Positions 23,009-42,318 are shown, counted from the stretch's first letter. The stretch: 64,000 nucleotides of DNA from Stylophora pistillata (GCF_002571385.2 NW_019217845.1:227452-291451), one strand, 5' to 3'. A program made the numbers and translations. The notes: generated by a model not told the origin, from the sequence alone.

Positions 23009-25750
23009 TCACATGACCGTACAGCAAGCTGCATTCCTCCTCAGCCTACAAATTGGAGTGAGCACGGTCATCAGACGCCTTGCGATCTCTTCAGTGATGT
23101 CGAGCCGATGTACCATGATCCATTCTTCTGCAGGATTCTGACATGAACTTTGTAAACTCTGCACAGCACTTCCGTTCTTTGATCTTTTATCTTCGTTTAG
23201 AGCGCGCTCTTCCTCTGGCGTCAATGTACGTTCCAACTCATTGCTTTGGGTAGGAGTTATCGCTTCATGTTCGCGCTCAATAACTAGTTTCTCACTGCCT
23301 TCGTTTCCGTCTCGTAGTACCCCTTTGTCGGACGATACTCCTTCGTTAATGACTCGTACTTCTTCGTCTTCGGTATCGGGGTCGGTATTTGTGTTTTCTA
23401 GTGCCTCGTCTACACGCGATGTCTTAGTTTCCGGAGGAATAACATGTACTTCGGCAATGGCTTGCGTTTCGTCATCTTCGGTATTGGCATCGGTTCCCGA
23501 TGTGTCGCTTTCCGATAATTCATCGTCTTCGGTAAACGGATAAGCCAAAGCAGTCACTACTGTAAGATCCGAATCGTATCCGTCAAGATGGCGGTGACGA
23601 CCTTCAGATCTCGTTTCACTCATCTGCCTTTGGATTCCGGTGAAACCTTGGATTTCGGTGAAGGTATTTCCATCGTCGCTACTGCCCTTGCTTTCTTCCT
23701 CGTGAGTTGCTTGTTTATCTTTCTTGGCCTGCTCGTCAATAACAACTCGTACTTCGACAACATGCCCTCCTTCAGCTTTAGCGGATGTTTCTATTTGTTT
23801 GTCCTTGCGCACCAAAGTCTCTTCTGGAATTTCAACTTCAGCTTTCACTTCCTTCTGTTCGTTGGTATTGTTTTCTTGTGGCGACAACTCGTTGTTCTCT
23901 TTACAATTCAGCTGACCAGCGTTCTTTTCTTTCTTTTGATCAAGCTCTTTTGTTGTCACATTTTCCAAATCGTCCACCACGTTTGATTTCGCGTCGGTTG
24001 TTTTTGTGTCTTGCTTTAATTCAACAACAACAGCACCAGCTGTTTCTCCGAGCGCATCTTTGTCTTGGATCTCAGTTTCATCATCTTCTTTCTGCTTCTT
24101 CAACTCTCGATTGCTGTCTGTTAACTCCTTCTTTCTCTTCACTGCCTTAGAATTTTCTTCGCATTCGGTCAACTTTTCTTCATTTTCTTTTCGGGCGACA
24201 CTTTGTACATCAACGCTTTCCTCCAATCCAGAACTTTCACTCTTGTCCTCTTCGTCTATCTTCTTTGTTACTCCCATATCTGCGTTGGCAGTTTTTTCAT
24301 CCCCTTTCGATTTTTTCTTCCCTTGTAGAGCAGAACTTGGATTCGTAAACTTCCTGAATGAACGACGCAAAATATTTTCCTTCTTCTTCTTCTTGAGTGA
24401 AAGTTGTCTTGTCGCTTCATGCGCCTTGGCGGAATCGTCTTCCTTTTCTGTGCTGTTCTTTTCTTCTTCGAGAGAATCGCCCTGTTTCTCTTCAACAGAG
24501 CCCGATTTCTCCTCTGCTGTTGCCTGTTCGTCTTCCATTGCAATCAATTTGTGTTCTTCTCCATTGCCTGGACTTTTTTCTTTAAAGTCAGCTTGCTTGC
24601 GCAGTGCATCACCATCCATAACGCTTATGTCATCAGTTTCTTTGCCCACATCGATGTTGGTGCTCGGGTTGATTTCACTATTGTTTCCCTCATCTTTTTT
24701 AATTGATTTTCCTTTTGGTTTTTTCAGACTGGGTTTGTTACGCTTGAAGCTTAGAACCGTCACTTTTTTCTTCTGCTTGCTGGTCTCTTTCTTCGCAAGG
24801 TCAACTGTTTCTTCTTTCTCATCTTCTTGCTCATTCGATTCACCTTTGTTAGCGACAACAGGTATCTTCGACGAAGTCTCTTCTATGGCCATCTTCTGAG
24901 GATCTTCAGAGCTCTCGAATTTTTCAGATGGTTGCCTATGGCCGTCGCATGCGTCAGTGTAAACGCTTTGACTGAAAGTATATTTGCCTTTTGTGGTTCG
25001 ACGGAAACTTGGAAATTGCTTCATATTCAAGCCTTTGTTGTCCGTCGCTGTGGACTTGTCGTCTTGGACTCCCTCGGGAGAAGTAAACGGTTCTTTGTTT
25101 TCAATCTTCATCGTACTTTCAACAGTCTCGAATTTCGCTTCGTTAGCTTTATCCGCTGGTTCGTCACAAATCTCTTTCGCCCTCTCCTCGACGATCTTCG
25201 GATCCTCTTCGATAGTTTCACATTTCAAAATTTCAACACGTTTTTCTTCTTCGAGGGAGGTTTTGCGTTTGGAAATTTTCCCTTTCTTAGAACGGCGAAA
25301 ACTCAATCTCCCTTTCTTGCTGCTGTTGGCTTGATCGGGTTTGAAGGTTTGTTTTTCATTGCTCTTTAAGTCTTGAGTTATTTGAGTGTCCTGTTCACCT
25401 TGGCTTTCTTTGTTCGTATTTTCTTTAGCTGTTTCTTCTGTCGTTGCGATTTTCTCGCTGTCCTGTGAGGTGCTTTCTTCTAAACCGGTCGCCGTTTCGT
25501 CTGCCTCTTTCCCCTCAACGATTTCGCGTTTTCCTGCCATTTTCATCTCAGAATTATCAACGCTATTTTTTTTGTCAGAAGCAAAATAAGAACTTTCCTG
25601 ACCTTTAAACTCGCTCTCCAAATGTCCTTTAGGTTGTGTTTTTGTTGCCTCTTTTCCACTCTTCGTTTTTGGCGTCGATTCTCGGCTGTGTTCGTCTTTG
25701 GCGCCGAAAAGCTGCTCGTCGATTCCACTTGTTTGCGAACTCTCTGCCAT
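23009..25750 (-). CDS. Orphan ~913-aa acidic/Lys-rich disordered protein with polybasic SF[RK]R segments, a C-terminal EEWIMV motif and CaaX (AACCTVM)
   Basis: Uninterrupted 2.7-kb ORF; first ATG at 25750 (aaaATGG, MAESSQ); ends CCTVM-stop; no recognisable globular domain. Confidence 0.85.
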   Translation of the reverse strand: MAESSQTSGIDEQLFGAKDEHSRESTPKTKSGKEATKTQPKGHLESEFKGQESSYFASDKKNSVDNSEMKMAGKREIVEGKEADETATGLEESTSQDSEKIATTEETAKENTNKESQGEQDTQITQDLKSNEKQTFKPDQANSSKKGRLSFRRSKKGKISKRKTSLEEEKRVEILKCETIEEDPKIVEERAKEICDEPADKANEAKFETVESTMKIENKEPFTSPEGVQDDKSTATDNKGLNMKQFPSFRRTTKGKYTFSQSVYTDACDGHRQPSEKFESSEDPQKMAIEETSSKIPVVANKGESNEQEDEKEETVDLAKKETSKQKKKVTVLSFKRNKPSLKKPKGKSIKKDEGNNSEINPSTNIDVGKETDDISVMDGDALRKQADFKEKSPGNGEEHKLIAMEDEQATAEEKSGSVEEKQGDSLEEEKNSTEKEDDSAKAHEATRQLSLKKKKKENILRRSFRKFTNPSSALQGKKKSKGDEKTANADMGVTKKIDEEDKSESSGLEESVDVQSVARKENEEKLTECEENSKAVKRKKELTDSNRELKKQKEDDETEIQDKDALGETAGAVVVELKQDTKTTDAKSNVVDDLENVTTKELDQKKEKNAGQLNCKENNELSPQENNTNEQKEVKAEVEIPEETLVRKDKQIETSAKAEGGHVVEVRVVIDEQAKKDKQATHEEESKGSSDDGNTFTEIQGFTGIQRQMSETRSEGRHRHLDGYDSDLTVVTALAYPFTEDDELSESDTSGTDANTEDDETQAIAEVHVIPPETKTSRVDEALENTNTDPDTEDEEVRVINEGVSSDKGVLRDGNEGSEKLVIEREHEAITPTQSNELERTLTPEEERALNEDKRSKNGSAVQSLQSSCQNPAEEWIMVHRLDITEEIARRLMTVLTPICRLRRNAACCTVM

Positions 25751-28431
25751 TTTAAAACGAAATTTGAGAAAGATCCTAACGCTTGCGTTACAAACTTGCC
25801 TTTGCAAAATGATTAGAATTTAAATGAAAGAGAAATATCAAATCTGTCCAATGATCGTCACAGTGACAGTCACGTGATGCATATGCACGTGAAATTAACG
25901 AGTGTTTTGTGTGAGACCTTTATCGACAGGTTGACATCGAGCTTTTCGCGTCGTCAATTTAAGTATTGTGCGTTTAACTTTTATCACTGAGATGGTTTAG
26001 CTGAATTTTATACTTAGAGGAAAAGGGAAAAGTGTAGGTTCAACAGTGTAACAAACCAATCAGAATAATTTCAAAGGCGGTTCCTTTTTTTTCTGCCACA
26101 TGTTGGCAAGGTGTAAAAACTAGCACGGTGGTTTAAACACGAATGCTGCGTCACGAGTTTATTTGTGATTAACATGTGTAAAGAACGTGAACAACTACAT
26201 CAAGACACAATCTGATTTCCTGAATAAAACTTTGATATGTCTTCTTTTCGCGTGAAACGAAAATTTCCACCGAAACAACTCTTAGTCCAAACAGTAGCTC
26301 TCTCAAGAGTTCACTTTGGCGGAGCGTACTTAAAGCTCTTTTTTCAGCGCGCTTTTATCGAAATATTTCCTTCCCGAGAGCGATCAATACACGAACAGTT
26401 TTCTTCATCCTTTTCTAGGTGCTCATTATATAGCGCTGGGGTCAAGCTCCACATTTTACACGAACTTTTGGCAATGGAGTAGATATTGGCGGCAAATGGC
26501 AAAACATTCCGCATTTCCTGAACCATTTTGGTCGCTGGAGAATGTATTTTTTGTTTGCTTAATTAGAATATGCTCTTCTTTACTCGCTCCTTTTTTGGAT
26601 CTGCACGAGGATTCAACAAGTAAACAAGATAAAGTTCGAGCTTAAAATCCCTTATGACTCTCATGTGAGTTCAGTTAAGGACATTACGTCATGCTAATCT
26701 GTTGTTACGAGCCAAGTTACTTGAACTTAAAGGAAAATGCCCTGAAAATATCAGTTTGATAAGATTGAAAACACCAAAATGAACAGAATAAACCAGAAAA
26801 GGTTGAGGGTAATTAAGAGTGAAAAATATTTGTACAAATTGCAAATTACGGACTGAACTATTGAGGCTAAATTTTTGCGATATGTGAAGTATAACGCACT
26901 CGGTGGACAAATTGTTGCTTTTTTGCTACGTGAAGTGCGGGCGTGAAAAACTTAAGATTTGCGACAGAGGAGGCTAAACGAGCTTCTATGATTTTCAAGC
27001 GACTCAAACGGACTGAATTACTAGAGAAGTAAGAAGGTTTTGATTTTCATTGGTGTTGTTAGTTCGACTTTTTTCATACTAAACACAAAAATCGAAGTTA
27101 GTAAACAGGGCTATTTATAGGTGCAAGTTATCGATTATTCATTTACTGTAAGAATAACGAATCCGTAGTTTCGATAAGAAAGGACCCTTGATGAAGTGAT
27201 CTAGAATTATGGCTACCTTGAATTTGGTGAAAATAAATTGAAGTTTCAGAGGTTAGAAAATAGGGTGGTAGCTGATCCCTTCGAGGGCTTTGATGATTCA
27301 TCGACATTTGTTTTATAACGTTCTGCATGTGTAATGAAGTGCGGACAGGTTCCGTCAAATACTCTTTGGCGGAGCCGTCAAAACTTCAAACGCACGATTT
27401 TCCCCGTTTGAAAAAAATAATTGACAGACCTGGAAGCATTTGTTTGATAATCGTTTAATCTCTTGTTATGTTTTTACAGTTTAACCAGTCTTCACTCGAA
27501 ATCAAAAGAAAAAAAAAGGCATTTGGCGGTCTATAGAATAAATATTTGAGCTGGTTGTCTAAAATCTGGTACATAACGAAGACGGTGTGAACTTTTTTAC
27601 CAAAATATTTTTCTTCAAACGATGCTTTCAAAACCAAACACATTTGAACTCTTCTTAACCTAGACCATCTAAGTTTCTTTACAACCCTAAATATTTTCAA
27701 CATAATATTTGAGCGTGACAAAATTTGGAGAAATCATATGATAGCGTAATGACTTAAAGTTACGTAAAAAAAAAAAGCAAGGTAAAAAAAAAAAAGTCTC
27801 GCTCTTGGAGCTTGAAAGGTTCAGAACTGAACAAATTGCTGCGGCTATCTATAATATTTTTATCACTGTGTTAAATGAAATAATTCTTATTTTTCTGAAA
27901 CAAGCAAGGATCAACCTCGACAAAACGTTTCAGCAATATGATTATTTTTTTTCGCAATAAATTATTTCCAAAAGATAGATTTTTAAAACAATAAAAGAAA
28001 TGAATTGAAAAATCAAAATATGAAAGAGTCGATTCCTCTTTTTGTGAGCCAATGTCGAGGATTTTCTATTACATAACGTGGTTTGATTTCTTCAGAACGC
28101 TCAAAAAGGAACCCCATGACAGCATAGTGACTTCTTTAGTTATGTAATGAGAAAATTGTTAGAACAGTTCAAGTCAACCGGCTTGGTTTAAAAATCCGAT
28201 ACGATGTAAAAATGAAATATTGATTTGATTGTCAAGTTTTCTACGAAACAACAGTAAAGTTAACGAGTGGTTGCGAAACAGAAATAGGATCCAAAACATA
28301 GCTATTGTTCTTTGATCGTATCAATATCCTCATTTTTTTTTTTTTCTTTAGCTCGTGATGGTAGTTCATGCGCGAGATTCGTGTAACCCAAGTGAGCTAC
28401 TCAAACTGTCCTCCTCAAAGTTCATTACCTC

Positions 28432-29481
28432 TCACAGAAGTGTCTCTTCAATCGGTTTTGCCGCTTTTATCTTCTTTTTAGCCTTTTGGAGCATTTTTCG
28501 ACGTTTGATCGCACTTGTGAAGTACTGAGGGTATTTCTTGATCAAAGGCGCCATGAGATACACCAGAACTTGTCTAGTGGCTTCTTTAGCTTGTTGTGCA
28601 CGATTCATCAGGGAATTCCAGAGAACGTCTAGCTTCACGAGGCCAAAACCATAGGCACACAAGGACATTTCATACTGAAGTAGGGAAGAAATTGAGTGGG
28701 TCAGAAGAGAATTATCGGTGCTTAATCCAAGACCTTTGAACATCGCGTGCACTTCCAAGTAGGTCCCAGTTGAAGGCACGCCAATCTTCTCTTGTAATTC
28801 CTGGAGACTCTCAACTTTCTTGATCGCTTCCATTAATTCGTCAGCATCGGGGTCGATTTTCTCAGAAACTTCATTTTGAATCTCTTGGATTACTGTCGAA
28901 ACATCGGCGGTCACATCTGGGACTTCGATGTTTTCGCCCATGGCGTCTGTGACTCCTTCTAATCCAATATGAGGGCTACCTTCGCCTTGACTGACCAGTT
29001 GTGGAACAGCTTCCTCAACGTTTAGTTTGTCCACCGGCAGGGCGGCTACTGGAATGGTCTCTGTCGGCAGAGGATCTTGTTTTTCGTTTTCGTCCCGTCG
29101 ATTCTTCCTCCTCATTGCAAATGATCGTCCAAGTGTGAGACCACGTCTTAGTCGACTCTTAGACTTTTCCTTTTCGTCTTCCAGTGTTTTTGCTTGTCCA
29201 TCCTCTGTTTCTAGTTCATCGCCAGAACTTGGAATGGGCAACTCGCTAGAAGTGACGAGCGAACGATGGCGTCTGTGTCCCTTTTTGACCTTCTTCTTCT
29301 TCTCTGGTTTAGTGATTTCCTGTTCAGGCGTTTCTGGTTTTGAATTTTCTGGTTGAGGAGTTTCTTCTTTAGGAATTTCTGGTTCAGAAAACTCTTCTTT
29401 TGAAGTTTCGTCTTCTTTTTTATCACTTATCCAGGGAAGTAATCCAACGAGGCCTCGCTTGACGGAAAAGCTCTCTGCCAT
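28432..29481 (-). CDS. Orphan ~349-aa protein: disordered acidic/basic N-half, helical C-terminal region, ends ETLL (class I PDZ-ligand-like)
   Basis: Single ORF from ATG 29481 (aacATGG, MAESFS); TATA box and CCAAT boxes directly upstream. Confidence 0.8.
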   Translation of the reverse strand: MAESFSVKRGLVGLLPWISDKKEDETSKEEFSEPEIPKEETPQPENSKPETPEQEITKPEKKKKVKKGHRRHRSLVTSSELPIPSSGDELETEDGQAKTLEDEKEKSKSRLRRGLTLGRSFAMRRKNRRDENEKQDPLPTETIPVAALPVDKLNVEEAVPQLVSQGEGSPHIGLEGVTDAMGENIEVPDVTADVSTVIQEIQNEVSEKIDPDADELMEAIKKVESLQELQEKIGVPSTGTYLEVHAMFKGLGLSTDNSLLTHSISSLLQYEMSLCAYGFGLVKLDVLWNSLMNRAQQAKEATRQVLVYLMAPLIKKYPQYFTSAIKRRKMLQKAKKKIKAAKPIEETLL

Positions 29482-29551
29482 GTTCACTTGAATAGCTACA
29501 ATGACATAATGACAACAGCTGAACTTTGTTAGAAAAAATATATGAATTCGT

Positions 29552-29649
29552 CTTTATATAGCTGAACGAGTTCAAACGTGTTAATTCTCTTACTGATGCA
29601 ATGTCATAGCAAATAAGCGTGGCGCTCACCAATGCAGCACGTTGATTGG
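29552..29649 (-). promoter_or_regulatory. Core promoter of the 28432-29481 gene (TATA + two CCAAT boxes)
   Basis: Minus-strand CTATATAAAG at ~29552-29561; CCAAT at ~29629 and ATTGG at ~29645. Confidence 0.55.
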
Positions 29650-30873
29650 ACAAACATACGATAAGTTAAACAATGACTCCGTTTAGGTTGAGCAGTCTCG
29701 ATCAAAGTTCACCGGGTTTGTAGTCGTAACGAATTTGTCACTTGAACTTTAATATGAAAATAAAGTGAACATTGTTCGTTGCGTGGTAAAACGCAGAATT
29801 ATCTCTTTGGGGCTTGAACATACCTTACGCTGTGATCATGTTTCTCCCAAAGTATTCAATCCGATTGCGAAAAAATGAACTGAAACCCTTTCTAGCCCCA
29901 AAAGAGTCTTTCCTACGTCACCTAGCCGTGCACAAACAGGACGTCACGTTAGAGGCAGAAATTTTATTAAAGCTAGGTTTATTATAAGTTTTTTTTCGCT
30001 CGCTGGAAAAAAAATAGGACACAAGATTGTGTTACATTGCTTTGAGCTGCTGTCACTACCTTTTGTCAGTATCGGTCCAATTGAAAAACGAATGTCAGGT
30101 CAAGAGAGTAAAGTGAGAGTTTAAAGTAAATTCTTACAACCAAAACCACAATGAATGTATGATGAGAGTTAAGGAGAATCTGTATCTTGACAAAAGGGTC
30201 CAAAGAACTACAGTCGATCTAGAATAAGTAAACATTTCCTGGTTAAAGCTCAACGTTTCCGTTGGAACATGACCCTTGGGAATATTCAGGTGTTGAGGTA
30301 AATGTTGATAACTGCCTCTTATGTCACGAACTCAGAAAAAAAAACAAAAAAACGCAGTCGTCTGCATGGAATTCCACACGCTTTTACCTAGGACTTTTTT
30401 CATTTATTTGAGTTAAACGTATACGCGAGGGTAATAAAATGTTGTGGCTTACTCGTGGAATGCCTATAGTTGAAGCCAGTATATTTACGTACAATGTGGG
30501 AGGCAAACCTTTGAAACGCAGGGGTGCTCATGTACGGTAGGAAAAAAAGCAAGGTGGGCACGCGACGAGCTCGAGTCCAATATCATATCTTAATGCGTTG
30601 ACCTTTAAAAAATGTTTATTTGGACGATTGCATAATATGTGGCTGTAGTTAATCTCGGGGGTTTAAATAAATGAATGCTTCATCGACTGTTAATCGTGAC
30701 CGTTCGATTCCTTCACCGGAAATAGGGTAGAACTGATTCAGCCATGTGGATCCCGGTATAGGCCGGGAGGCCTGGAATGTAGCTTCCTCCTCCTCTCCAA
30801 TCTTTTCGGTTAGAAGTAACATGCACGTTCTGGGAAACGTGCCCAAGACCCTTTAATCTTGATCTACAACGCT

Positions 30874-30889
30874 AGGGCGGATCTAGGGG

Positions 30890-30920
<31 letters not shown>

Positions 30921-31037
30921 TTTTCTCTCAGAACGCTGGAAATCATGTTTCCGAAGACCTAATTTTCAATATCTTAAACCCCTCAGAAGGGGAACAGTTC
31001 TCCGAACCCCCCTTGACTAAATCCTGGATCCGCCCCA
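30874..31037. mobile_element. hAT-like MITE
   Basis: TIR gggcggatctagg / cctggatccgcccc; imperfect 8-bp flanks acaacgct/gcaacggt. Confidence 0.6.
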
Positions 31038-32155: not shown

Positions 32156-32794
32156 TTAGAGAATATGACAAAAACGCTCCGGTTCAACTTCTTTGTATGG
32201 TGTGCACTTCCTTCTTAAATAAAGTGTTCGCTTTGCCTCTTCCTTCTCGAAAGCTTGAAGATTGAGATCAACTATGGTCCATTCCCCGATTGAGGAGAAA
32301 AATACGGGACTCTCAGCGATTCCAAAGACGTAATTATCGGGATTTGGAAGCGATCCACGGCAAGCATTGGAACTTTTAGAACTGGCTTGGTTTTCGTCCA
32401 ATGTTTCCTGTGTCTTTCCATAATAGCAGTTCGGTTTGTGTTTCTCCATTTTGTGTCTCACGCCGTCCGATTTCTTTCTTTTCCACAAATGAAGATTAAG
32501 ACTCACATATTCAAAATCTCCGTTTGGGGTATTAATATTTGGATGTTTGTCAGTTTGTAGCTGTGCGATTTCCACCGGCATCAAATCGTGCGTAGTCCGA
32601 GTTTTGTTTTGGTAATTAGCTATCTCTGTTGGTGTGACCACTACGCTTGTTTCGGTAATTAACCCATCAGCTCTCAAAACGTGGGTTTGATCCTCATGAA
32701 AGTCGTAATTCCACTCCAATTGACAACTCGGGGTCGCTGAACAGTCGCAGCGTAAGTTGTTCCGATCGCTGGGTGGGAACTGGTTTCTAGTCAT
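32156..32794 (-). CDS. Orphan 212-aa protein with GEWTIVDL motif and C-terminal CaaX (CHIL, geranylgeranyl-type)
   Basis: Single ORF. A polypyrimidine/AG acceptor ~14 nt upstream of the ATG suggests a 5'UTR intron. Ends CHIL-stop. Confidence 0.72.
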   Translation of the reverse strand: MTRNQFPPSDRNNLRCDCSATPSCQLEWNYDFHEDQTHVLRADGLITETSVVVTPTEIANYQNKTRTTHDLMPVEIAQLQTDKHPNINTPNGDFEYVSLNLHLWKRKKSDGVRHKMEKHKPNCYYGKTQETLDENQASSKSSNACRGSLPNPDNYVFGIAESPVFFSSIGEWTIVDLNLQAFEKEEAKRTLYLRRKCTPYKEVEPERFCHIL

Positions 32795-35700
32795 GAAATG
32801 GAGAAACCTTCAAGAAAATGAAAACAGAACAGAATGCAGATTCAGTCGCTTGGAATAACCACGTGTAATGTAAGTAAAAAATAGCAACAAAGAAAGTGAA
32901 AAAGATACTTCTTTTAGTTGTTCATTACATTGTTTACGGTGATTTCCAATTCGATTTCTCGAATCGAATTGGTTCTTAACATCTCATTTGGGTGATGCAG
33001 TGGCAGAACTGTTCTTTTTAATTGAAATGGTGGATTAAAAGCCGCTTGTAATCAAACAGGAAAAAAGAACAGGACAAAAACTAGTGAACCTTTAGTAGCA
33101 ATTGGCCATTTTCGATATATTAAAATTCTAACATGGCTCCAGGGCTAAGGGGAATAAAGCAAAAGAAATAAGTTATTCATCCCTCAACCTCGATGTGATT
33201 TCCGGTTTGTTTTATTCCCCCAAGCCTCGGAGGCCTACTGACTACCAGCTGCTATAAAGTAATGGAGTCCAGGCTTCCACCTTCTCCTCTCCTAGGGGGG
33301 GTCACGGGCACCCCAGGACCCCCCCTGGCTACGCCCTTACGGTGTAAGGGGAAATTAGATACTAGTCAAAGCTTCTCCTGGCGCTTTTTCTATTGCTGAC
33401 TCCTTTTGCACAGATTTAAGTTTTACATCGAAAGAGGACGACATTTAAATGGAATAAAACTTGATGACTAGGAACATAAAAAATGTATCGTTTTCAGGGG
33501 CGCATCCAGGATTTTTCAAAGCAGGAAATAACTAAGGAATTACGTAACTGACAGGTGTTGTAAAATAATTTTCAAAGCAAAAATAATGGCAATATTTCGT
33601 TAAGATCCGATCAAGGACCGCAGGGGAATGATCAGGGTGGCTGAATCGTTTTACTCAATAGAGTAAGCCATGAAAAACGTCTTTTTACAATTTCGATACA
33701 GTGTCAAGCAGAAAGAGAATGTGAAGATTGAAGAGGACACATATATTGGACATGTTGATTGAGAGCTAAATTCTTAAGCTTGAAATCACAGGAGATATAT
33801 GGCAGACAGGTAAGAAGAAATTATATAAAGATCTCGGGAGGTGTCAAATTGATGATGGTCTCGTGATCGCCCACCTGAAATGTCTCCGTTCTAAAAATAC
33901 TTATTCGGTAATATAGCAGTATTGCGGTAGGTGTGTATGATATTATTATTTTATAAAAATAAAATTCAAGGCTGCACTCAAGTAGAGAAGGATATCATCA
34001 CAGACAACTGTTTCAACTGATAAATTAGGAGACAAATGTTGACCATTGTCATTTGATTTGCAAGATGAAGGTCATTTAAGTTCGGTATTGTACATAACGT
34101 GTCGTGATACTTTAAAAAAAAAAAGAACAACAGCAAAATACTTTCGATCAAGTCCTATTTCACTGCTAAAAAGAATATTTTTCCAAATTTTTCAATCTTA
34201 AAATTCAACATACATGTTGGACTTTCTGACGCGAAGTTTGAACTGAAGTTTAACCCGTGAAAGGTCATTCGTTTGGACTGGAAACCGTATCAAATGTGCG
34301 TTCGTCACGACGAAATAATTCTGACTAAACGACTCTTTTCTAAAGAAGGTTATTACAAGATTTTTAAAGATCATGATATCGATAGACATAAGCGTACCTG
34401 TACGAGACGGTTTGGGCGATATTTTCGACGTGCACAATATACTACTTGCAGTATCCTGATGCAATGTTGGCGAGTTTCTACTTAAATTACAAACTTTTTA
34501 GCTGCCGTTTTCTGAATCATTTGCAGAAACAGTCTTATGTCTTTCACTGCCATACCTTATTGGTAAATCACTTCCTTGTTTGTAATACACGAGTGGAGGG
34601 GTAAAAATACGAAATGATTCACCCACTCTTCGTTTCTGACTCGTTACTGTCTCGTGATTCAATCGTTTGTTTGCATTTGGCACGAGATCTTGGCGCGTCT
34701 TACTGTCACTTATACGAAAAAAAAAAAACTCAGATATTTCTCAAATTTGTTTCTGTACGTACCTTTTCTTCCTATATAATTACCTTTAGACTACGACGAC
34801 CAGCCACGAATTCGTTCAAATACCCACAGAGCGAACTGAATAACCTCGGGTGTAAACAGGAAGTGAACTTTAGGCGAGGGAGGGTCGCGCGCGTAAAATT
34901 TTGTCACAACCACACACCACAGGTGAAACGCGCGTGTCACTGACGTTACGGGACTTCAACTTTACGTTGAGAGTACAGACGAGGCTAACGTCTTCGAAAT
35001 AAATGGCAAAAGGAATATCGAAAAGAAAAAGAAAGAGTTTTCTAGTTTTCTGTAACTTCAGTTCAAAATGTGAAACGTGATTTAACCAAACTTTGATGTC
35101 AATATTGTTAATGAAATCATTGGCTACTCGTAATTTCACAATATTTCAACGGAACTTTACAATCCACACTTCACTGTGCACTTAAAAAACCCACCAGGAT
35201 TCGGTATGCAAAAGCTCTGGAGTGAAAACTTCCCCAAAACCAAATTCCTTCCCCTCCTTCCATCCCATTCTACAGGGAGAAAAAAAGGGTTTGTTGCAGA
35301 AATTCTTAGATGATTAGGGTGAAAAAATTTAAATAATTTCTTTTTCCACATTGCCCATGAGGGCAAAATACAAACTCTTAAGGCAAAGGGTATGTGAATT
35401 CAACTGTCTTTTACTGTGTATCTTCAACCTTGCATAATCTAACAACGACATGCACATTCTCCATACTATTCTTTATACCTTCTCTAAGATGCTGACAATG
35501 ATAATTTGCATAACAATCCAGAGTCTCCTTAGTTGCTGATCATGTATTTCATTCCTGTGACCTTCTTGTTTGATTTAGGGGTGATATTGTAAGGAGAAAT
35601 TAGATGTTGGTCATTGTTAGGGATCAAAGGATTAAGGCACAAGTGGGTGAATTCAACAGTCAGTTGGTGTGTAAATTTTAGCTTGTATCAACACAACACA

Positions 35701-36696
35701 GTTTAAACTTTTTTTTAATAGGGTAGTTTAATTAAAAGAAATTTACAGAACACATCAAAGTCAAATTCCGGCCTGGCTTCTTGCTATAGACATTATAGTA
35801 ATTTTACTACAGTCTACCCTATGACCACATTCAATAATTTCCATTTCAGAGCTTGGGTAACTATCTTTGTTACACAATTTGAGTAATTCTGGAATATCTC
35901 ATTATGAAATTTATGTGGCCACTAATATTCACCACTTAATGTGATCAATAGGTGCATAACTCAATAATGATTAACACGGCATATAATAAAACTGTGATTT
36001 TGTTACCTCAAGGACTTATGTGAACTTGATGGTTTTTGTTGAAGCTAGCTATTTCCCTGGTACAATTAGTGACAAAATAATTTTTTACTATGTTCCTAAT
36101 GTGCATGGAGTTGCAAAGCAGATGTGATTTTTACTCTCCAACATGGAACATGAGAATATAATAAAGTAAAATTAACAATTCCCTCAATAAAGAAAACTGT
36201 ACCCTCTTGAAAATTCTACATAAATAGTTCTAAGCAGTTGTCTGAGAATGGGTGTATTCTAGTTGTCAGCAAAACCAGAAGACAGAAGAATTTCTCAGAC
36301 AAAGTCAAGCACCTACAACACATTTAGAACTTTCACTGAAAAACTGATTGGTCTCCTTAGAAAAAAAATGGAATCCCAGTAACATATTTTCTTGCTTCAG
36401 TTAGAATGACCAGAGCCACTCTTATCTCTCTAATCAAGATGATTCTAAGAATTTCGTTTGAAGATTACAACTAAATTCCATTCATCCCAGGTAAACCAAT
36501 TATTTAGTCACTTGTAGCATTGGTCTCAGTTAATAAAACCAATAGGAAACTACCTTCAGGAGAACTAATTTAATAGGGCTGAATGGGCTATCAGATAATT
36601 AAAATCATGTGTGTTCCATGAAACTAGGTAACCATGAATTGTGTCATATTTATATTGCCCAATCAAGGCTGCACTCTAAGAAAGATTAAAGGGAGC

Positions 36697-36827
36697 CCTG
36701 TGCACTGAAACTGTGAAATCCAGGGTGCCCAGCATATGCCTTTTATGAAAAAACTAAGATTCCTAGGTTGCCCAAGAGCAAAAGTAAGGCACCAGGGGCT
36801 ACCGGGCACTGCCAGACCACAGCCCTG
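36697..36827 (+). repeat. Dispersed DNA-element fragment, second copy at ~5995-6085
   Basis: Shared cccaagagcaa..gtaaggcaccagggg..acc.ggcactgccaga..ccacagcc.tg. Confidence 0.55.
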
Positions 36828-37312
36828 CCAATTGAAATCCTATATTTCCCCTTTGGGGAAATCAAGGGTGTAATAACATGAGTATAAACTAATTTCAAGT
36901 ATTATCACGTGCTCTGCAATGGGATAACAATAGGACAATTGTCTACACAAACTCTTTACCCATCAAACCCTTGCTGCCCTTTCACAGAACTTGCTTGACA
37001 AATTATCAGGAGAGCAAGCAATTACATGCAATAAAATGCATACCTACATATTTTTACCCTAGAAATTTCTCTGCTTTCCCTGCCCAATAAACGATACACA
37101 GGGCTGTCCTTTCATATCATGCATGATATAAACTTCGTAATGTATCTACTTTAATTCTCTGACCGTGTAATGTACATATTGAAATGAATTAAACTGAAAC
37201 CATCTCCTAACACTTTCTCCCACCTTCTAAGCTTTGTAAGCTACACAATAGAAATCAAGGAATATTTCGTGGCTTTCATTCGATCAAGAAATAAATTAAC
37301 GCCTTCTCTAGT

Positions 37313-37690
37313 TCACATAACACAACAACATACTTGATCCTTTCCATAAACTGAACTCAAAAGAAGCAAGTCCTCTTTCACTTCGTGGGTAGACTTGTTC
37401 ATATCCACATAGATCCATTCTTCGTACGCCTTGTTGGCGTCAGGTGAAAGTTCTGTTGATCTTTCCATCGACGATTCTCGAAAGTCGGCAATATCCTGAT
37501 CTGTGATAAAGACTGGCTCGTCTCTCCCGAATCCAAATTCAAGCTCTTCGTCATCACTATCAGCTTTTAAGGGAGTCGTTTCTTCCGTGACTTGTTTTAC
37601 GTCGATATTAATGTGGTCCTCCACTGGATTGTCGTCGACTTTAAGATCAATGTTTTCGATAGTTGGCGTTTCTGTTCCACTCGCTGCCAT
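37313..37690 (-). CDS. Orphan 125-aa acidic protein with EEWIYVDM motif and C-terminal CCCVM (CaaX plus palmitoylatable Cys)
   Basis: Single ORF, start tacATGG, ends VCCCVM-stop. Confidence 0.78.
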   Translation of the reverse strand: MAASGTETPTIENIDLKVDDNPVEDHINIDVKQVTEETTPLKADSDDEELEFGFGRDEPVFITDQDIADFRESSMERSTELSPDANKAYEEWIYVDMNKSTHEVKEDLLLLSSVYGKDQVCCCVM

Positions 37691-38389
37691 GTATATACCT
37701 TATCAGTGCACAGCACACGTATGTTTGTACTTTCGCTTCTGGTATGATCTCGTCACGACTTGCCCTGGCCTTTACGTACAGTACTTTTCCTTTCTGTTCG
37801 CTCTCAAAGCTTAAAAAACCTCAAGTAGTTTTCTCCTGATTCAAAATACTTCCCACAAAAGCTCTCTAATACTCAAAAAGAGATTAATCTTAGATCTTTC
37901 TCCATATAATGATTTACTTTCTCTTTGTCGAAGCTCAGGAATACCCAGCCTCGCTTTCAGTAGCCTGCCAACAGGCTCTCGGTTTGGAGGGCGCGATATC
38001 ACGCAGATGTCACGCAAATATCTACCCATAATTCTATTATAGGACGCAAATTGACGCATTTTAAAAAATTCGTAGCTTCAATTCCATTTGATTTTCCAAA
38101 GAACAGACCACCAGAATTTTTTGGGTGACTTCGTGTCTAACCTAAAGATCTAAGTCAGTACAAAAACTTTGAACCTCAAACAGCAAAGGTTTATGTTATC
38201 ATATGTAATGTTTTAGGGATGAAGTCAGCTGAATTAATTCCTCACAACAAATCCCTGGATTAAGGAATAGACGACAAGTCACAGGACAGTACAATATTCA
38301 CTACAGGATTTTGGTGGTTTTCGTCGCTTTCGCTCGGTTTGAGGAGCGTTACGTGGCATATTAAAAACCGTCTGCGAAGGAGATAAACC

Positions 38390-40487
38390 CTACCTCTCAT
38401 TTAAGATCAAAATTTTTGTACATCATTTTTTTCCATTTTCGTGTTCAGTGTGTCTCCTTCACCTACTCTGCCAAATTTCAGTTTAGACTGAGCATCAGAA
38501 ATATCTTTTTTCGGGCCGTTAAATTCACGATTTCGCGTCCGCCATTATTTGACCATGTTCCGGAAGTTGATCGTTGGACTTAGAGGAAGTGACGTCAAAG
38601 GCTTAACGCGAAAATCTCACATCGCAAAATGTCAAGCAAATTAACATAACAGAGTGCTTTACTCTATTCTTACAATAACTAAACAAAAATGACTGGGCAT
38701 CGAGGCGTAATTCAAAGCTGAAGTAATCGTGCAGACCATGCTGCAGGTATTTCTCTGCATCGGCGCCTTGCAAATAGATCAGAGCGGGAAAAACGGATGC
38801 GATTTATGCGACCTCGCCGAGTAAACTTCAATCCTACAGAAATATTTGTGATCTATTCTGAACACTTTTCGGAGGACTGTTTCGAGAGATCTGTTTACTT
38901 TGAAGGATATAGGGGAAGAATTCTGTCGGGTTCAGTGCCTACCGTTCAAGAAGAGAAGGGACAAGAAAAACCATCCTCAGTGCGATCTCGACGCCGGAAA
39001 GCGAAGTCTACGAACCTCCACGGATTTTGTCACCTTTACATATGAGCTGATCAATATCCACCTTTAACAACTCTCTGGCAGAATACCTTACACAAAGGAA
39101 AGTACTCGGTGAACATTGTAAATAAGAATGATAAAATAGCCGAATTGAGGATTGAGATTTCTGACCTCAAAGAGCTCACTTTTATACAAAAGAGATGAAA
39201 AATATAATTGTGTGCTCTGATTCTAAAAAAAGCTGGCTTTAATATCAGCGAAAGCAGAACAAACAGCTTAAGACACAGAGCGTAAAAACACTTTAAAATG
39301 TAGGCTTGCAGCCAAAAAACCGAGAAAATGAAAATTTCTTTAAAAACCTGTCAAACTATCAACCATCTGACAGCCAAGTCAGCGTGCTATCAAAGGGTCT
39401 CAAATTCATCCCAACGCCCGTGACAAACGAATTTAAAATCAGGCCAACTTTTGCGAGATTTATTCGCAAGACGAATGCGCCTCCGTTACACCTTTCACGG
39501 ACAAAACAAAGAACCACTTCTGTTTCATATCAAACTGAATGCCACCGGTTCAGTCTTCTATCGCCCTTCAGAGCTACTTGGAAAATTGTCATAACGCTAC
39601 TTGCAGACTGCATCTAAGCCAAAAAATACTTTGTAACGCAATGAGGTCACGGCTCTAAAAGAGTTGAAACAAACTCTGCTTTAAACCTCACCGAAGCAAC
39701 ACAACAATAGTCATCATGAATAAGACAGAAAAAACAAAAGAGGCCAAAGTGCAACTCAACAACAGAGTTCACTTCAAACCTCTCAAAGCACCGATAGTAA
39801 AAAACACGTAGGAAAGGGTTAATGAGATCATTGACCAAATGCATCGGGGAAAACACATTGATGGCTTAGAAATGGCTTTCACAAACTCCCAATATCCGCC
39901 TTCGGATACACAATTAGCCATTGCCGAAAACTATTTTTACTAATCACCCGATCATTTCTTACAAAAAAGGAAAATCCCTTACGACAAGCAAAAATACAGT
40001 TCGAAGGCGATAAAGCGATGCGACCACAAAAGCCACATGGGGAGTCCGTGCCGTTCTGTGTTTATCTTTATTCGCATGGCAAAAATTCATCGTTTGTCGG
40101 CGCAAAACTATCCACAGAAGCTTCAGATGATTTCTGGGACAATTCATCGTCTGAAAAAGTCGACATTTCCCGACTGACAACGAAACAGTTCTCAAAAAAG
40201 TAATATGTGTGATTCTCTGTGCAGCGAACAAAGAGAGTTGTGACAAAGCAAAGCATAAGTTTGTTGAGCCTTTGACGTCATGATGACGTTTTTGCGGGCT
40301 CGGCTGGAACATGTTTTCAGCAATGGCGGACGATTTTTGGACGACTTTGAAGCGGTAAAAATTGGTCATCGAAGGTTTGTTTTGAGTTTTTAATGGCAAA
40401 AAGGGTCTTAACTTGACCCAATTCAACATTGTGTAAACAATTTAGGCCAAAATAAAATGGTCAATTTTCGTCTCAGGGGCACTTTAA
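38390..40487. mobile_element. Decayed composite transposon region: THAP-domain remnant, Penelope-like RT fragment, Kolobok-like end
   Basis: 38797-39045 encodes RRVNFNPT..VIYSEHFSEDCFER (THAP CSxHF-like); 39306-39900 encodes frameshifted NLSNYQ..SQVSVLSKGLKFIPTP...RMRLRY (PLE ORF N-terminus); ends ggggcacTTTAA. Confidence 0.55.
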
Positions 40488-40589
40488 CCTNNNNNNNNNN
40501 NNNNNNNNNNNATTTGTTTTAAGAACATCAAATTTCCGCGGGGCAACTGTCAGCCGATAGTTCCTCGACAGAAACACTATTGTTTAGCT

Positions 40590-41205
40590 ATGACCAACTA
40601 TCATTCATTTTGAGCTTGTTCAAATTCTTCATGATAGTCGATGATAGTTTCTTACGTTTGACCACGCGTATGATAGTTCATGATAGTTTTTGGTCAGCTG
40701 TTTCTCCAAAAATCGGCGAGCTCGTTTAAAATGGCCGCCAAAAGCTCCTCGCGAGGCTCAGCTTCAGCTTCAGAAATTCGTTTTTATACCCAAGATAATA
40801 ATGAGAAAGAAAATAGTGAAAACCAAGAATCTGGTTTTCAATTTCAACATCCCCCTATCGTTTCTCCTTTTAATCCATTCCCTTGTCCGTCGTCTCTTCC
40901 CCATCGCTCTCCAGATTCATCCTCCGTACATTCCTCCAACAAATCGAATACTAGTCAGCAAGCTGCCCCCCTCTTTCGTCGTGATAAATTCATACACAAG
41001 TTTGTTTGTCTCAGGCGAAGCCACGTTAGTGTTCACATTTTACGCGGAAAGAGCCTGTAACTAGCTGCTCGCGTGATTTTGCTCGCGCGACTGCCAGTGA
41101 ACTATCATCAACGTTTTTGGCGATTTGACCATGCGAATGATAGTTGATGATAGTTTGAAGACAATCAACTATCATCGACCATCATGCGCCGTTTGACCAA
41201 GGCTT
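40590..41205. mobile_element. Non-autonomous DNA element with internal atgatagt repeats (PIF/Harbinger-like)
   Basis: Multiple atgatagtt/aactatcat motifs in both orientations; terminus cgtttgaccaaggc. Confidence 0.5.
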
Positions 41206-41547
41206 TATCCCATTCAGAACCTCAAACTTTCCTACAAAGGGCCATCTTAACTCTTGCCCAGTTCTCTCACATTTACGCGGAAGCCACAAAACCTTCAGAA
41301 GACTTTTTAAAGTTGGTTACAAGTTCAGGAAATGACACAAAAGTACGATTATATAATTTTTAATAGCAAATTTGCATTATAAACTCATGCTATCATTCAA
41401 ACCCAGTTACTTCTGAACACCAACACGAAGGAATATAAATGTTTTCTTTTAAACGAGATGACACTTGAAATGCATGGCGGTTACACATTAACACTAATTC
41501 GACTATGAAATCGAAAATAAACTCAGAATGCCTAGCTATTGTTCCAA

Positions 41548-42318
41548 CTACATTATGGAACACTTTCCACCTCGTCCACATCCTATGCATTTTACAGTTT
41601 TTTCGTCGAGTTCGTCAACACTCCGCGTAATTTCTCGCCTTTCGTTCTTCAAGCTCTGTTCCAGCCTCAAATCAACGTCTTCAAACTCTGCTTCCCCCAA
41701 GCTAATGGCTTCTTCAACCGGCGATTCTCCCTGTTTTAATGTGTACGTTTCTTCCACAATTTTATTTTCGAACACAAGCGCGGAAAGTTCGGGTTTGAAC
41801 GAAGATTTTACGACATCATCATGAACACTATCTCGTGAGTTGACACTCTCATTCGATTTCCGAGTGGCATAGAAATCTTTTCCGAGCGATGATTCAATCA
41901 CGAACTTCGGCTTGTCGTTCTTTGATTTCGATTTCGTCGATTTCGAAGCTTCTTTAGGTTTCTTCTCGCTTTCAAATGGAGCTGTTCCGAATTTGTCTTT
42001 GTTGATGTCCTTTTTGGATGGCTCTTTGATGTTTTCCGCTTCGTGTGGTTTTTCAGCTTCTTTTTCAATTTCCTTCTCAGGTTCTGAAGCAAATCCAGGT
42101 TCTTCTGAATCAGGACTTATAACTTTCCGTTGTCGACTACGCGACCGCCTGGCATGCTGGGCGTACTCACCCAATGTGTCAATCGCAGGTCCTTCGTTCT
42201 TTGTTCCCTCTTTCTCAGCTCTTTCGTCAACTTGTCTTTCAACAGCTTTTTCAGTTGGGATTAAAATTTTCAAATCTGGTGTCTTGCTCTTGTTTTCTAA
42301 TGTGACGGCTTCCTTTTC
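41548..42318 (-). CDS. In-frame continuation of the SxIP gene beyond the TAG; ends EFEDVDL...CIGCGRGGKCSIM (CaaX)
   Basis: Same frame as 42319-45021 (offset 771 nt = 257 codons); open from the codon after the TAG to CSIM-TAA; no ATG until the last codon. Confidence 0.72.
   Translation of the reverse strand, partial: EKEAVTLENKSKTPDLKILIPTEKAVERQVDERAEKEGTKNEGPAIDTLGEYAQHARRSRSRQRKVISPDSEEPGFASEPEKEIEKEAEKPHEAENIKEPSKKDINKDKFGTAPFESEKKPKEASKSTKSKSKNDKPKFVIESSLGKDFYATRKSNESVNSRDSVHDDVVKSSFKPELSALVFENKIVEETYTLKQGESPVEEAISLGEAEFEDVDLRLEQSLKNERREITRSVDELDEKTVKCIGCGRGGKCSIM

What the first reader, a model, noticed from the sequence alone, without database searches (positions are those of the whole stretch)
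23100..41700. LIR/AIM-like motif at a near-fixed distance from the prenyl anchor: candidate membrane-anchored ATG8 adaptors
Seen: EEWIMVHR (W at 23120-23122), GEWTIVDL (32279-32281), EEWIYVDM (37415-37417) and AEFEDVDL (41683-41685); the 212-aa protein also has GDFEYVSL. Known: the LC3/ATG8-interacting region is acidic-[W/F/Y]xx[L/I/V], and TP53INP1 uses a very similar DEWILVD. Inference: LIR plus CaaX would tether ATG8-coated membranes to a prenyl-targeted membrane, an architecture I do not recognise among known selective-autophagy receptors. LIR patterns are short and have many false positives; the support here is positional repetition in four genes.
Basis: partly seen in the sequence, partly recalled or inferred. 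Interest (0 to 1): 0.8.

Follow-up and report, generated by a model that had tools for sequence, protein, structure and literature searches.

The report
Lipid-anchored coral proteins with ATG8-docking-like motif
Four neighbouring coral genes encode floppy, lipid-anchored proteins that all keep a short motif resembling the docking site for the autophagy protein ATG8 about 30-40 residues before the anchor; the motif is real and conserved, but ATG8 binding is untested.

Summary
Observation confirmed. Four minus-strand genes end in CaaX: g1 at 23009-25750, g2 at 32156-32794, g3 at 37313-37690, and the g4 tail at 41548-42318. Each carries acidic-[W/F]xxV 30-41 residues before the prenyl cysteine.

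- **Not chance.** Only 5 of 499 ORFs in the window end in CaaX, and 4 of those 5 carry the motif. Shuffle probabilities are 0.0015-0.018 per gene.
- **Assembly gap.** The gap at 40491-40511 lies between genes and touches no ORF.
- **Conservation.** The motif is kept at protein level in 29 stony-coral g3 orthologues and 3 g1 proteins. In g4 it is kept out to sea anemones (Nematostella, Actinia).
- **Context.** AlphaFold2 gives low confidence, consistent with disorder. No Pfam family matches, and no relative was found outside stony corals and sea anemones.
- **Motif class.** g1 and g3 fit the GABARAP-interaction motif [W/F][V/I]xV. g1, g2 and g4 fit the iLIR xLIR pattern.
- **Caveats.** The g1 and g3 tails are homologous, so the four cases are not fully independent. 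Anemone g4 lacks acidic residues before the Phe. Only g1 fits the "C-helix" rule. g2 has no known orthologue.

ATG8 docking is the best-fitting reading (about 0.4) but unproven. The library searches found no published prenyl-anchored LIR protein. The scan has not noted this motif on other DNA.

The parts
23009..25750 (-). g1: 913-aa acidic, Lys/Glu-rich protein (net charge -55) ending CCTVM
   Evidence: The ORF is. It is identical to the annotated 913-aa P0030, with two orthologues P0031 and P0032. No Pfam or NCBIfam hit.
23111..23128 (-). g1 motif EEWIMV (xLIR and GIM match), 33 residues before the CaaX Cys
   Evidence: QNPAEEWIMVH is an 11-residue invariant run in a protein with 48% three-way identity. 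It contains the only Trp in 913 aa.
23012..23023 (-). g1 CaaX box CTVM, preceded by a second Cys
   Evidence: CC[T][VI]M is kept in all three proteins.
32156..32794 (-). g2: 212-aa protein ending CHIL
   Evidence: The ORF is. PolyA-RNA contigs from three studies and stranded raw reads cover it. A GT..AG intron (32806-34395) joins a non-coding 5' exon. The upstream exon has stops in all frames, so ATG 32794 is the start.
32270..32287 (-). g2 tail motif GEWTIV(DLNL), 37 residues before the CaaX Cys
   Evidence: xLIR match. No orthologue is available.
32504..32518 (-). g2 internal second copy DFEYV(SLNL)
   Evidence: It shares [DE][FW]x[YI]V[SD]LNL with the tail copy.
32159..32170 (-). g2 CaaX box CHIL (X = Leu, geranylgeranyl type)
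34396..34721 (-). g2 5'-UTR exon
   Evidence: Splice joint 32805/34396 seen in RNA contigs X10 and X14 and in one X22 read.
37313..37690 (-). g3: 125-aa very acidic protein (net charge -22) ending CCCVM; intronless transcript of about 35650-37950
   Evidence: There are 29 orthologues at 61-98% identity (18 sequences aligned). Stranded RNA depth is 30-80 and continuous, with no joints.
37406..37423 (-). g3 motif EEWIYV (GIM match), 30 residues before the CaaX Cys
   Evidence: E90, E91, W92, I93, V95 and D96 are invariant in 18 aligned sequences. Codons change synonymously across four corals. RNA SNPs beside the motif are synonymous.
37316..37327 (-). g3 CaaX box CCVM with a further upstream Cys
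   Evidence: CC.[VI]M is invariant in orthologues.
41548..42318 (-). g4 C-terminal part (256 codons) ending KCSIM
   Evidence: Orthologues of 1020-1200 aa read body and tail as one protein.
41674..41691 (-). g4 motif AEFEDV(DL), 41 residues before the CaaX Cys
   Evidence: xLIR match. F113 is invariant, and D115 and L118 are at least 90% conserved in 24 sequences that include anemones. The motif is a conserved island with variable flanks.
41551..41562 (-). g4 CaaX box CSIM with upstream Cys cluster (KCIGCGRGGKCSIM)
   Evidence: LDEKTVKC.CGRGGKCSIM is nearly invariant from corals to Nematostella and Actinia.
42319..42321 (-). In-frame TAG between g4 body and tail
   Evidence: The 98%-identical P0033, held only in the Logan assemblies of public sequencing runs, has Lys here. 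Another coral has one uninterrupted 1172-codon ORF.
42322..45021 (-). g4 body: Ser/Pro-rich, with 15 [ST]xIP motifs
40491..40511 (.). Assembly gap (21 N), intergenic between g4 and g3
   Evidence: It lies outside all ORFs of the finding and was not filled.

Best explanation
The cluster encodes four intrinsically disordered proteins found so far only in stony corals and sea anemones (Hexacorallia). Each is held on a membrane by a C-terminal lipid anchor: a CaaX prenyl group (farnesyl where X = Met, geranylgeranyl for CHIL), probably with palmitate on the neighbouring cysteines. About 30-41 residues from the anchor, each keeps the short linear motif acidic-[W/F]-x-x-V-[D]-hydrophobic. The best-fitting reading is that this is an ATG8-family docking site, an LIR. 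In g1 and g3 it has the GABARAP-preferring form [W/F][V/I]xV. The aromatic and Val side chains would enter the two hydrophobic pockets of ATG8, and the acidic residues would contact its basic N-terminal arm. A 30-40 residue flexible linker would let the anchored protein engage lipidated ATG8 on the same or an apposed membrane. That could recruit or retain the protein on ATG8-positive membranes, or mark its home membrane for autophagic capture. For g4 it could also link that membrane to EB-bound microtubule tips through the SxIP array. Shown here: the motif, its position, its protein-level conservation, low-confidence (disorder-like) predictions, expression of g2 and g3, and presence of ATG8 genes in the genome. 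Inferred: prenylation and palmitoylation, ATG8 binding, and every downstream role.
For: The motif and anchor are present in 4 of the 5 CaaX-ending ORFs in the window, and shuffle P is 0.0015-0.018 per gene. Conservation is strong: EEWI[YF]VD is invariant in 18 aligned g3 sequences out of 29 hits, with synonymous codon turnover. QNPAEEWIMVH is invariant in g1. In g4 the Phe is invariant and +2 D/E, +3 V/I and +5 L are kept across 24 sequences out to Nematostella and Actinia, with variable flanks. g1, both g2 copies and g4 match the published xLIR expression (PMC5119064). g1, g3 and the FVDV orthologues of g4 match the GIM (PMC5538626). The layout aromatic-x-x-[VI]-D-[LV] equals the validated TP53INP2 LIR core, where W35, L36, I37, I38 and L40 are the reported residues (PMC3314686). 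AlphaFold2 is low-confidence for g3 (pLDDT 37) and the g4 tail (pLDDT 55). In g4 the motif lies in coil just before a weak helix at 118-141. About four ATG8 loci exist in the same genome. g3 and g2 are transcribed.
Against: There are no binding data. LIR-like patterns have many false positives: the xLIR expression matches at about 1.5e-3 per position (PMC5119064). g3 itself fails xLIR because of Tyr at X2. g2 and g4 of this species fail the GIM. [quoted passage not shown] Anemone g4 has S-A-A-F with a basic upstream flank, and P0078 has Pro at the aliphatic position. In g3 the whole 35-residue tail is conserved, including NLLLLSSVYG, so the constraint is not limited to the LIR core. The g1 and g3 tails are homologous, which reduces independence. 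g2 has no orthologue and evolves fast, with 6 non-synonymous against 4 synonymous variants.
Confidence: 0.4

Rival explanations
1. The motif is a real short linear motif, but for a partner other than ATG8. For g4 this could be an FFAT-like site for the ER protein VAP, which would make a lipid-anchored ER contact-site tether. Other candidates are the FIP200 claw, a clathrin or adaptor appendage, or a cnidarian-specific partner.
For: Conservation and low-confidence (disorder-like) predictions argue for a linear motif but not for a particular partner. g4 E-F-E-D-V-D-L matches the FFAT core EFFDAxE at positions 1, 2 and 4 and has an acidic flank in corals (PMC8306308). In g4, +2 Asp and +5 Leu are as conserved as the LIR key positions, which LIR rules alone do not require.
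Against: g1 (EWIMVHR) and g3 (EWIYVDV) match FFAT only at position 1. Anemone g4 has a basic rather than acidic flank, and Val replaces the small Ala at position 5. No NES spacing, kinesin W-acidic motif (W followed by D/E) or AP2 motif fits all four. The LIR is the only catalogued class I checked that fits all four.
Confidence: 0.3
2. The conserved hydrophobic and acidic stretch is part of the membrane-targeting module itself. It could be a patch that helps membrane insertion, sorting or palmitoylation of the neighbouring cysteines. It could also be read by a prenyl-protein chaperone, with no autophagy link.
For: In g3 and g1 the whole stretch from the motif to the CaaX box is conserved: NLLLLSSVYG in g3, and TEEIARRL and LRRN in g1. 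The spacing to the anchor is fixed within each family: 30 in all g3 sequences and 33 in all g1 sequences. The tails carry extra Cys and basic residues typical of second membrane signals.
Against: The motif is strongly acidic (EEW..VD, EFEDVD), which is unfavourable at a membrane surface. In g4 the 20 residues between the motif and the Cys cluster are variable and charged. Known second signals lie within about 10-20 residues of the CaaX box (established knowledge), not 30-41.
Confidence: 0.2
3. Chance resemblance: the motifs have no function, and the repetition reflects shared ancestry or composition only.
For: LIR-like patterns are frequent, and the g1 and g3 tails share ancestry.
Against: The g4 motif is kept between stony corals and sea anemones, with variable flanks. 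Synonymous codon turnover with fixed residues is seen in g3. Shuffle probabilities are low. The sole Trp of g1 and of g3 lies in the motif.
Confidence: 0.03

Closest known systems
TP53INP1 / TP53INP2 (DOR) region-1 LIR
   Same: An acidic stretch followed by W-x-x-[IV]-D-[LF] in a disordered region. It is a validated ATG8-family binder whose binding is lost on W35A/I38A (PMC3314686). The g2, g3 and g4 motifs have the same layout.
   Different: TP53INP proteins are soluble nucleo-cytoplasmic shuttles with the motif near the N-terminus, overlapping an NES. They have no lipid anchor. There is no sequence homology beyond the motif.
GIM-type adaptors such as PLEKHM1 ([W/F]-[V/I]-X2-V)
   Same: g1 WIMV, g3 WIYV/WIFV and the FVDV orthologues of g4 conform to the GIM (PMC5538626).
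   Different: PLEKHM1 is a large folded multidomain Rab7 effector. The coral proteins are predicted disordered, have no recognised domain and end in CaaX.
Membrane-embedded selective-autophagy receptors (FAM134B, SEC62, RTN3, FUNDC1, NIX)
   Same: An LIR on a flexible cytosolic segment tethered to a membrane. Some use an LIR core plus a C-terminal helix (PMC8727931). g1 has Asp at +7 and Ile at +8, as that rule requires.
   Different: Those receptors are anchored by transmembrane or reticulon hairpins, not by prenyl lipid. g2, g3 and g4 do not meet the +7/+8 rule.
Paralemmin (prenyl-palmitoyl-anchored disordered phosphoprotein)
   Same: A long, charged, disordered protein ending in a Cys cluster plus a CaaX of the -CSIM type. 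This resemblance is recalled from memory and is a lead only.
   Different: The Pfam Paralemmin model PF03285 matches none of the ORFs and nothing in the genome. No LIR is known in paralemmin.
FFAT-motif tethers binding VAP
   Same: An acidic tract plus an aromatic core motif in a disordered region of a membrane-associated protein. g4 EFEDVDL partly matches EFFDAxE (PMC8306308).
   Different: Positions 3, 5 and 7 mismatch in g4. g1 and g3 do not match, and the anemone flank is basic.

Membership tests
Canonical LIR/AIM motif | Core [W/F/Y]-x-x-[L/I/V] | tested here: met
   WIMV, WTIV (plus FEYV), WIYV and FEDV.
Canonical LIR/AIM motif | Acidic or phosphorylatable residues just before the aromatic residue | tested here: met
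   EE-W (g1, g3), GE-W (g2) and EAE-F (g4) in this genome. Anemone g4 orthologues have S-A-A-F with a basic flank, so the feature is not universal.
Canonical LIR/AIM motif | [quoted passage not shown] | tested here: inconclusive
   g1, both g2 copies and g4 match. g3 does not because of Tyr at X2, although its WIFV orthologues do (PMC5119064). The iLIR PSSM and ANCHOR scores could not be run.
Canonical LIR/AIM motif | Lies in an accessible, disordered segment | tested here: met
   AlphaFold2 gives g3 a mean pLDDT of 37 with no confident element. The g4 tail has pLDDT 55, with the motif in coil before a weak helix. The alignments were shallow (18 and 24 sequences).
Canonical LIR/AIM motif | Binds the two hydrophobic pockets of an ATG8-family protein, and binding is lost on aromatic/aliphatic-to-Ala changes | not testable with these tools
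   There is no complex-prediction or binding tool here. ATG8 genes are present in the genome.
GABARAP-interaction motif (GIM) | [W/F]-[V/I]-X2-V | tested here: inconclusive
   Met by g1 (WIMV), g3 (WIYV) and about half of the g4 orthologues (FVDV). Not met by g2 (WTIV, FEYV) or by g4 in this genome (FEDV) (PMC5538626).
LIR core + C-helix mode | Asp/Glu at +7 and a hydrophobic residue at +8 or +11, within a helix after the core | tested here: not met
   Only g1 has D at +7 and I at +8. g2 has L at +7, g3 has K at +7, and g4 has L or S at +7 with E at +8 (the rule is from PMC8727931). AlphaFold2 does place a weak helix right after the g4 motif.
CaaX-prenylated proteins | Cys at -4 from the C-terminus followed by two mostly aliphatic residues and X, directly before the stop codon | tested here: met
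   CTVM, CHIL, CCVM and CSIM. The box is invariant in orthologues of g1, g3 and g4.
CaaX-prenylated proteins | Actual prenylation, -aaX cleavage, methylation, and palmitoylation of the upstream Cys | not testable with these tools
   Requires metabolic labelling or mass spectrometry.
Paralemmin family (PF03285) | Match to the Pfam Paralemmin model | tested here: not met
   No hit at E up to 1 for any ORF, and none in the whole genome at E up to 10. The control genomes of that search are prokaryotic, so genome-wide absence is weakly shown.
FFAT motif | Seven-residue core EFFDAxE with an upstream acidic flank | tested here: not met
   g4 matches positions 1, 2 and 4 only. g1 and g3 match position 1 only. 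The anemone flank is basic (PMC8306308).
Selective autophagy receptor | Binds cargo and ATG8 and is degraded with the cargo | not testable with these tools
   No functional data.

The most novel reading that the evidence does not exclude
Stony corals and sea anemones possess a lineage-specific set of prenyl/palmitoyl-anchored, fully disordered ATG8 (GABARAP-type) adaptors. Their oldest member (g4) also carries an array of about 15 EB1-binding SxIP motifs. One lipid-anchored protein would then couple a membrane, growing microtubule ends and ATG8-coated membranes. That combination was not found in the literature searched here.
Probability: 0.2. Interest if true: 0.7.

Novelty: new variant of a known kind. 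Interest (0 to 1): 0.5.

Why it matters
The membrane-bound LIR proteins covered by the papers read here (FAM134B, SEC62, RTN3) are integral membrane proteins. The 2024 review of lipidation in autophagy that I read discusses prenylation only for small GTPases and never uses the term LIR. A reversible lipid anchor combined with an LIR would be a different way to put ATG8 binding on a membrane, because palmitate cycling or prenyl chaperones could switch it on and off. It would also give cnidarian cell biology a testable handle. Autophagy of membranes, including symbiont-bearing compartments, is of interest in corals, although nothing here links these genes to symbiosis. If the motif binds something else, the cluster still defines unannotated, conserved, lipid-anchored disordered proteins that databases currently label 'titin-like' or 'hypothetical'.

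Tried and rejected
**Family scans and profile comparisons**
- Pfam and NCBIfam scans of all ORFs gave nothing.
- Paralemmin membership is rejected: no PF03285 match in the ORFs or the genome.
- hhalign shows g3 and g1 tails related (67%). The g4 tail matches the others only at the CaaX box.

**Motif classes that do not fit all four genes**
- FFAT motif: partial fit for g4 only.
- Nuclear export signal: no hydrophobic residue at the required upstream spacing in g4.
- Kinesin-light-chain W-acidic motif: W is followed by I or T, not D or E.
- AP2 beta-appendage motif [DE]xxFxx[FL]xxxR: the Arg is out of register.
- AKAP-type amphipathic helix in g1 (EEIARRLMTVL): only loosely fits and is absent from g3 and g4.
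- LIR + C-helix rule: met by g1 only.

**Searches for more members or relatives**
- The g3 profile finds only g3 in the genome.
- The pattern EEWIxV...CaaX finds only g1 and g3, plus three unrelated or random hits.
- HMMER with the g4 tail against 1.84 billion proteins found 14 cluster representatives, all of the same family; the named ones are Nematostella and Actinia, and none is recognisably bilaterian.
- A metagenome scan gave four coral loci. They show g4-g3 synteny but do not reach a g2 orthologue.

The g2 upstream exon is non-coding, and the g4 N-terminal upstream exon was left out.
Full report
**Observation.** The window is coral DNA (GC about 0.38; named orthologues come from Oculina, Orbicella, Nematostella and Actinia).

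On the minus strand, four ORFs end in a CaaX box directly before the stop codon:
- g1 at 23009-25750, 913 aa, ending CCTVM.
- g2 at 32156-32794, 212 aa, ending CHIL.
- g3 at 37313-37690, 125 aa, ending CCCVM.
- The g4 tail at 41548-42318, ending KCSIM.

The aromatic residue lies 33, 37, 30 and 41 residues before the CaaX cysteine. g2 has a second copy, GDFEYVSLNL, that mirrors its tail copy GEWTIVDLNL.

Of 499 stop-to-stop ORFs of at least 45 aa in the window, only five end in a CaaX-like box. Four of the five have the motif; the fifth is an antisense ORF over g4. Shuffling each tail gives probabilities of 0.0015-0.018 for such a motif in that position. g1 and g3 each contain one tryptophan, and it is the motif tryptophan.

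The assembly gap at 40491-40511 is intergenic. It lies 1,037 nt past the g4 stop codon and 2.8 kb before the g3 start codon. It touches none of these ORFs, and I did not fill it.

**Are these real genes?**
- *g3.* Stranded raw RNA reads and polyA-RNA contigs from separate studies cover g3 continuously from about 35.65 to 37.9 kb on one strand without a splice joint. It is therefore an intronless mRNA with a long 3' UTR.
- *g2.* It is covered at lower depth and has a GT..AG intron (32806-34395) that joins an upstream exon. That exon has stops in all frames, so ATG 32794 is the start.
- *g1.* It equals an annotated 913-aa protein (P0030).
- *g4.* In all 35 or so orthologues it is one protein of 1020-1200 aa. 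The in-frame TAG at 42319-42321 is Lys in the 98%-identical P0033, a protein held only in the Logan assemblies of public sequencing runs. Another coral has one uninterrupted 1172-codon ORF followed 1.3 kb later by the g3 orthologue. The tail therefore belongs to the SxIP-rich body (15 [ST]xIP motifs), and the g4-g3 order is syntenic.

**Conservation.**
- *g3.* There are 29 homologues at 61-98% identity; the one named is a stony coral. In the 18 aligned sequences, E90, E91, W92, I93, V95 and D96 are invariant, while X2 varies between Y and F and +5 between V and M. NLLLLSSVYG and CC.[VI]M are also fixed. Codons of the motif change synonymously across four corals, so the constraint is on the protein. 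RNA polymorphisms next to the motif are synonymous.
- *g1.* QNPAEEWIMVH is an 11-residue invariant run in a protein with 48% three-way identity.
- *g4.* In 24 sequences that include Nematostella and Actinia tenebrosa, the Phe is invariant. +2 Asp and +5 Leu are at least 90% conserved, and +3 is V or I. The residues on both sides vary, so the motif is a conserved island.
  - One lineage (P0078) has Pro at +3.
  - Anemones have S-A-A-F with a basic flank instead of an acidic one.
- *g2.* No orthologue is known. It shows 6 non-synonymous against 4 synonymous variants among individuals, none of them in the tail.

**Relationship of the four.**
- hhalign aligns the g3 and g1 tails over 36 columns, from EEWI to CC.VM, with probability 67% and E 5e-5. 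The g4 tail aligns to them only at the CaaX box.
- The g3 profile finds nothing else in the 398-Mb genome.
- A DNA pattern for EEWIxV followed by a CaaX end finds only g1 and g3, plus three unrelated hits.
- The repetition therefore stands for at least two lineages that are independent at sequence level, not four.

**What they are.**
- No Pfam or NCBIfam family matches.
- Paralemmin, the best-known prenyl-palmitoyl disordered protein, is excluded by its Pfam model.
- HMMER with the last 157 residues of g4 against 1.84 billion representatives found 14 clusters, all of the same family. The named ones are Nematostella and Actinia, and none is recognisably bilaterian.
- AlphaFold2 gives g3 a mean pLDDT of 37 with no confident element. 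The g4 tail gets 55, with the motif in coil and a weak helix at residues 118-141 right after it.
- Composition is that of charged disordered proteins, with net charge -55 for g1 and -22 for g3.
- From established knowledge, X = Met favours farnesylation and X = Leu favours geranylgeranylation. Cysteines next to the CaaX Cys are typical palmitoylation sites.

**Mechanism.** Among the catalogued linear motifs I checked, only the LIR fits all four.
- The xLIR expression of iLIR (PMC5119064) matches g1, both g2 copies and g4. g3 fails only through Tyr at X2, and its WIFV orthologues pass.
- The GABARAP-interaction motif [W/F]-[V/I]-X2-V (PMC5538626) is met by g1, g3 and the FVDV orthologues of g4.
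- The layout aromatic-x-x-[IV]-D-[LV] equals the validated TP53INP2 LIR core, with W35 and I38 flanked by L36, I37 and L40 (PMC3314686).
- The 'LIR core + C-helix' rule, acidic at +7 and hydrophobic at +8 or +11 (PMC8727931), is met only by g1.
- About four ATG8 loci exist in the genome.

My best reading, at about 0.4, is a lipid-anchored ATG8-docking tail. The rivals are another partner (0.3; g4 partly resembles an FFAT core, PMC8306308, but g1 and g3 do not), a role inside the membrane-targeting module (0.2) and chance (0.03). Binding was not testable here. The tools offer no complex prediction, and a fused construct would be a changed sequence.

**Novelty.** Four full-text searches found no prenyl-anchored LIR protein. 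The 2024 review of lipidation in autophagy covers prenylation only for small GTPases and never mentions LIR. I rate this a new variant of a known kind, and a candidate only. Earlier notes of the scan on this window (s1-791680 on SxIP, s1-791778 on the TAG) are consistent with what I found. The scan has not noted this motif on other DNA.

**Limits.**
- g2 orthologues were not searched.

Noticed in passing
window 42319-42321 (-): The in-frame TAG splits g4. The 98%-identical P0033, held only in the Logan assemblies of public sequencing runs, has Lys at this codon, and another coral (L014 980-4498) has one open 1172-codon frame. The TAG is therefore a nonsense allele or an assembly error in this genome rather than a family-wide feature.
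   Followed up: partly
window 42322-45021 (-): The g4 body carries 15 [ST]xIP motifs (SKIP, SRIP, SGIP, TGIP and others) between residues 368 and 701. This is an EB1-binding-like array on a protein with a lipid anchor.
   Followed up: partly
window 41869-41913, and upstream to about 42010 (-): g4 has further conserved islands besides the motif: KKDIxKDK[FY]GTAPF, KPKFVIESSLGKDFY (invariant from corals to anemones) and SALVFENK. Their function is unknown.
   Followed up: no
window 28432-29487 (-): A 351-aa ORF lies between g2 and g1 on the same strand. Its N-terminal half is acidic and Lys-rich, and its C-terminal half looks more ordered. It has no CaaX end and no significant Pfam hit, and may be a fifth gene of the cluster of a different kind.
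   Followed up: no
window 33282-33478, 35449-35645, 36631-36827: RNA depth spikes of up to thousands, with many loose read ends, mark these places. They look like repeated or transposable-element fragments, two of them inside the g3 3' UTR.
   Followed up: no
window 23009-25750 (-), residues 149-161 and 333-345: g1 has basic LSF[RK][RK]-type patches (LSFRRSKKGKISK, LSFKRNKPSLKKP) set in an acidic protein. They recall MARCKS/AKAP12-type phosphorylation and membrane-binding sites (a resemblance from memory).
   Followed up: no
window 32725 (g2 CDS): A 3-nt (in-frame) insertion polymorphism appears in RNA contigs of two runs, consistent with g2 being coding.
   Followed up: no
P0079 (701 aa, g4 family): One family member keeps AAFEDVEI and LDEKT but then continues into an unrelated C-terminus without a CaaX box. 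It may be an alternative isoform or a gene-model artefact.
   Followed up: no
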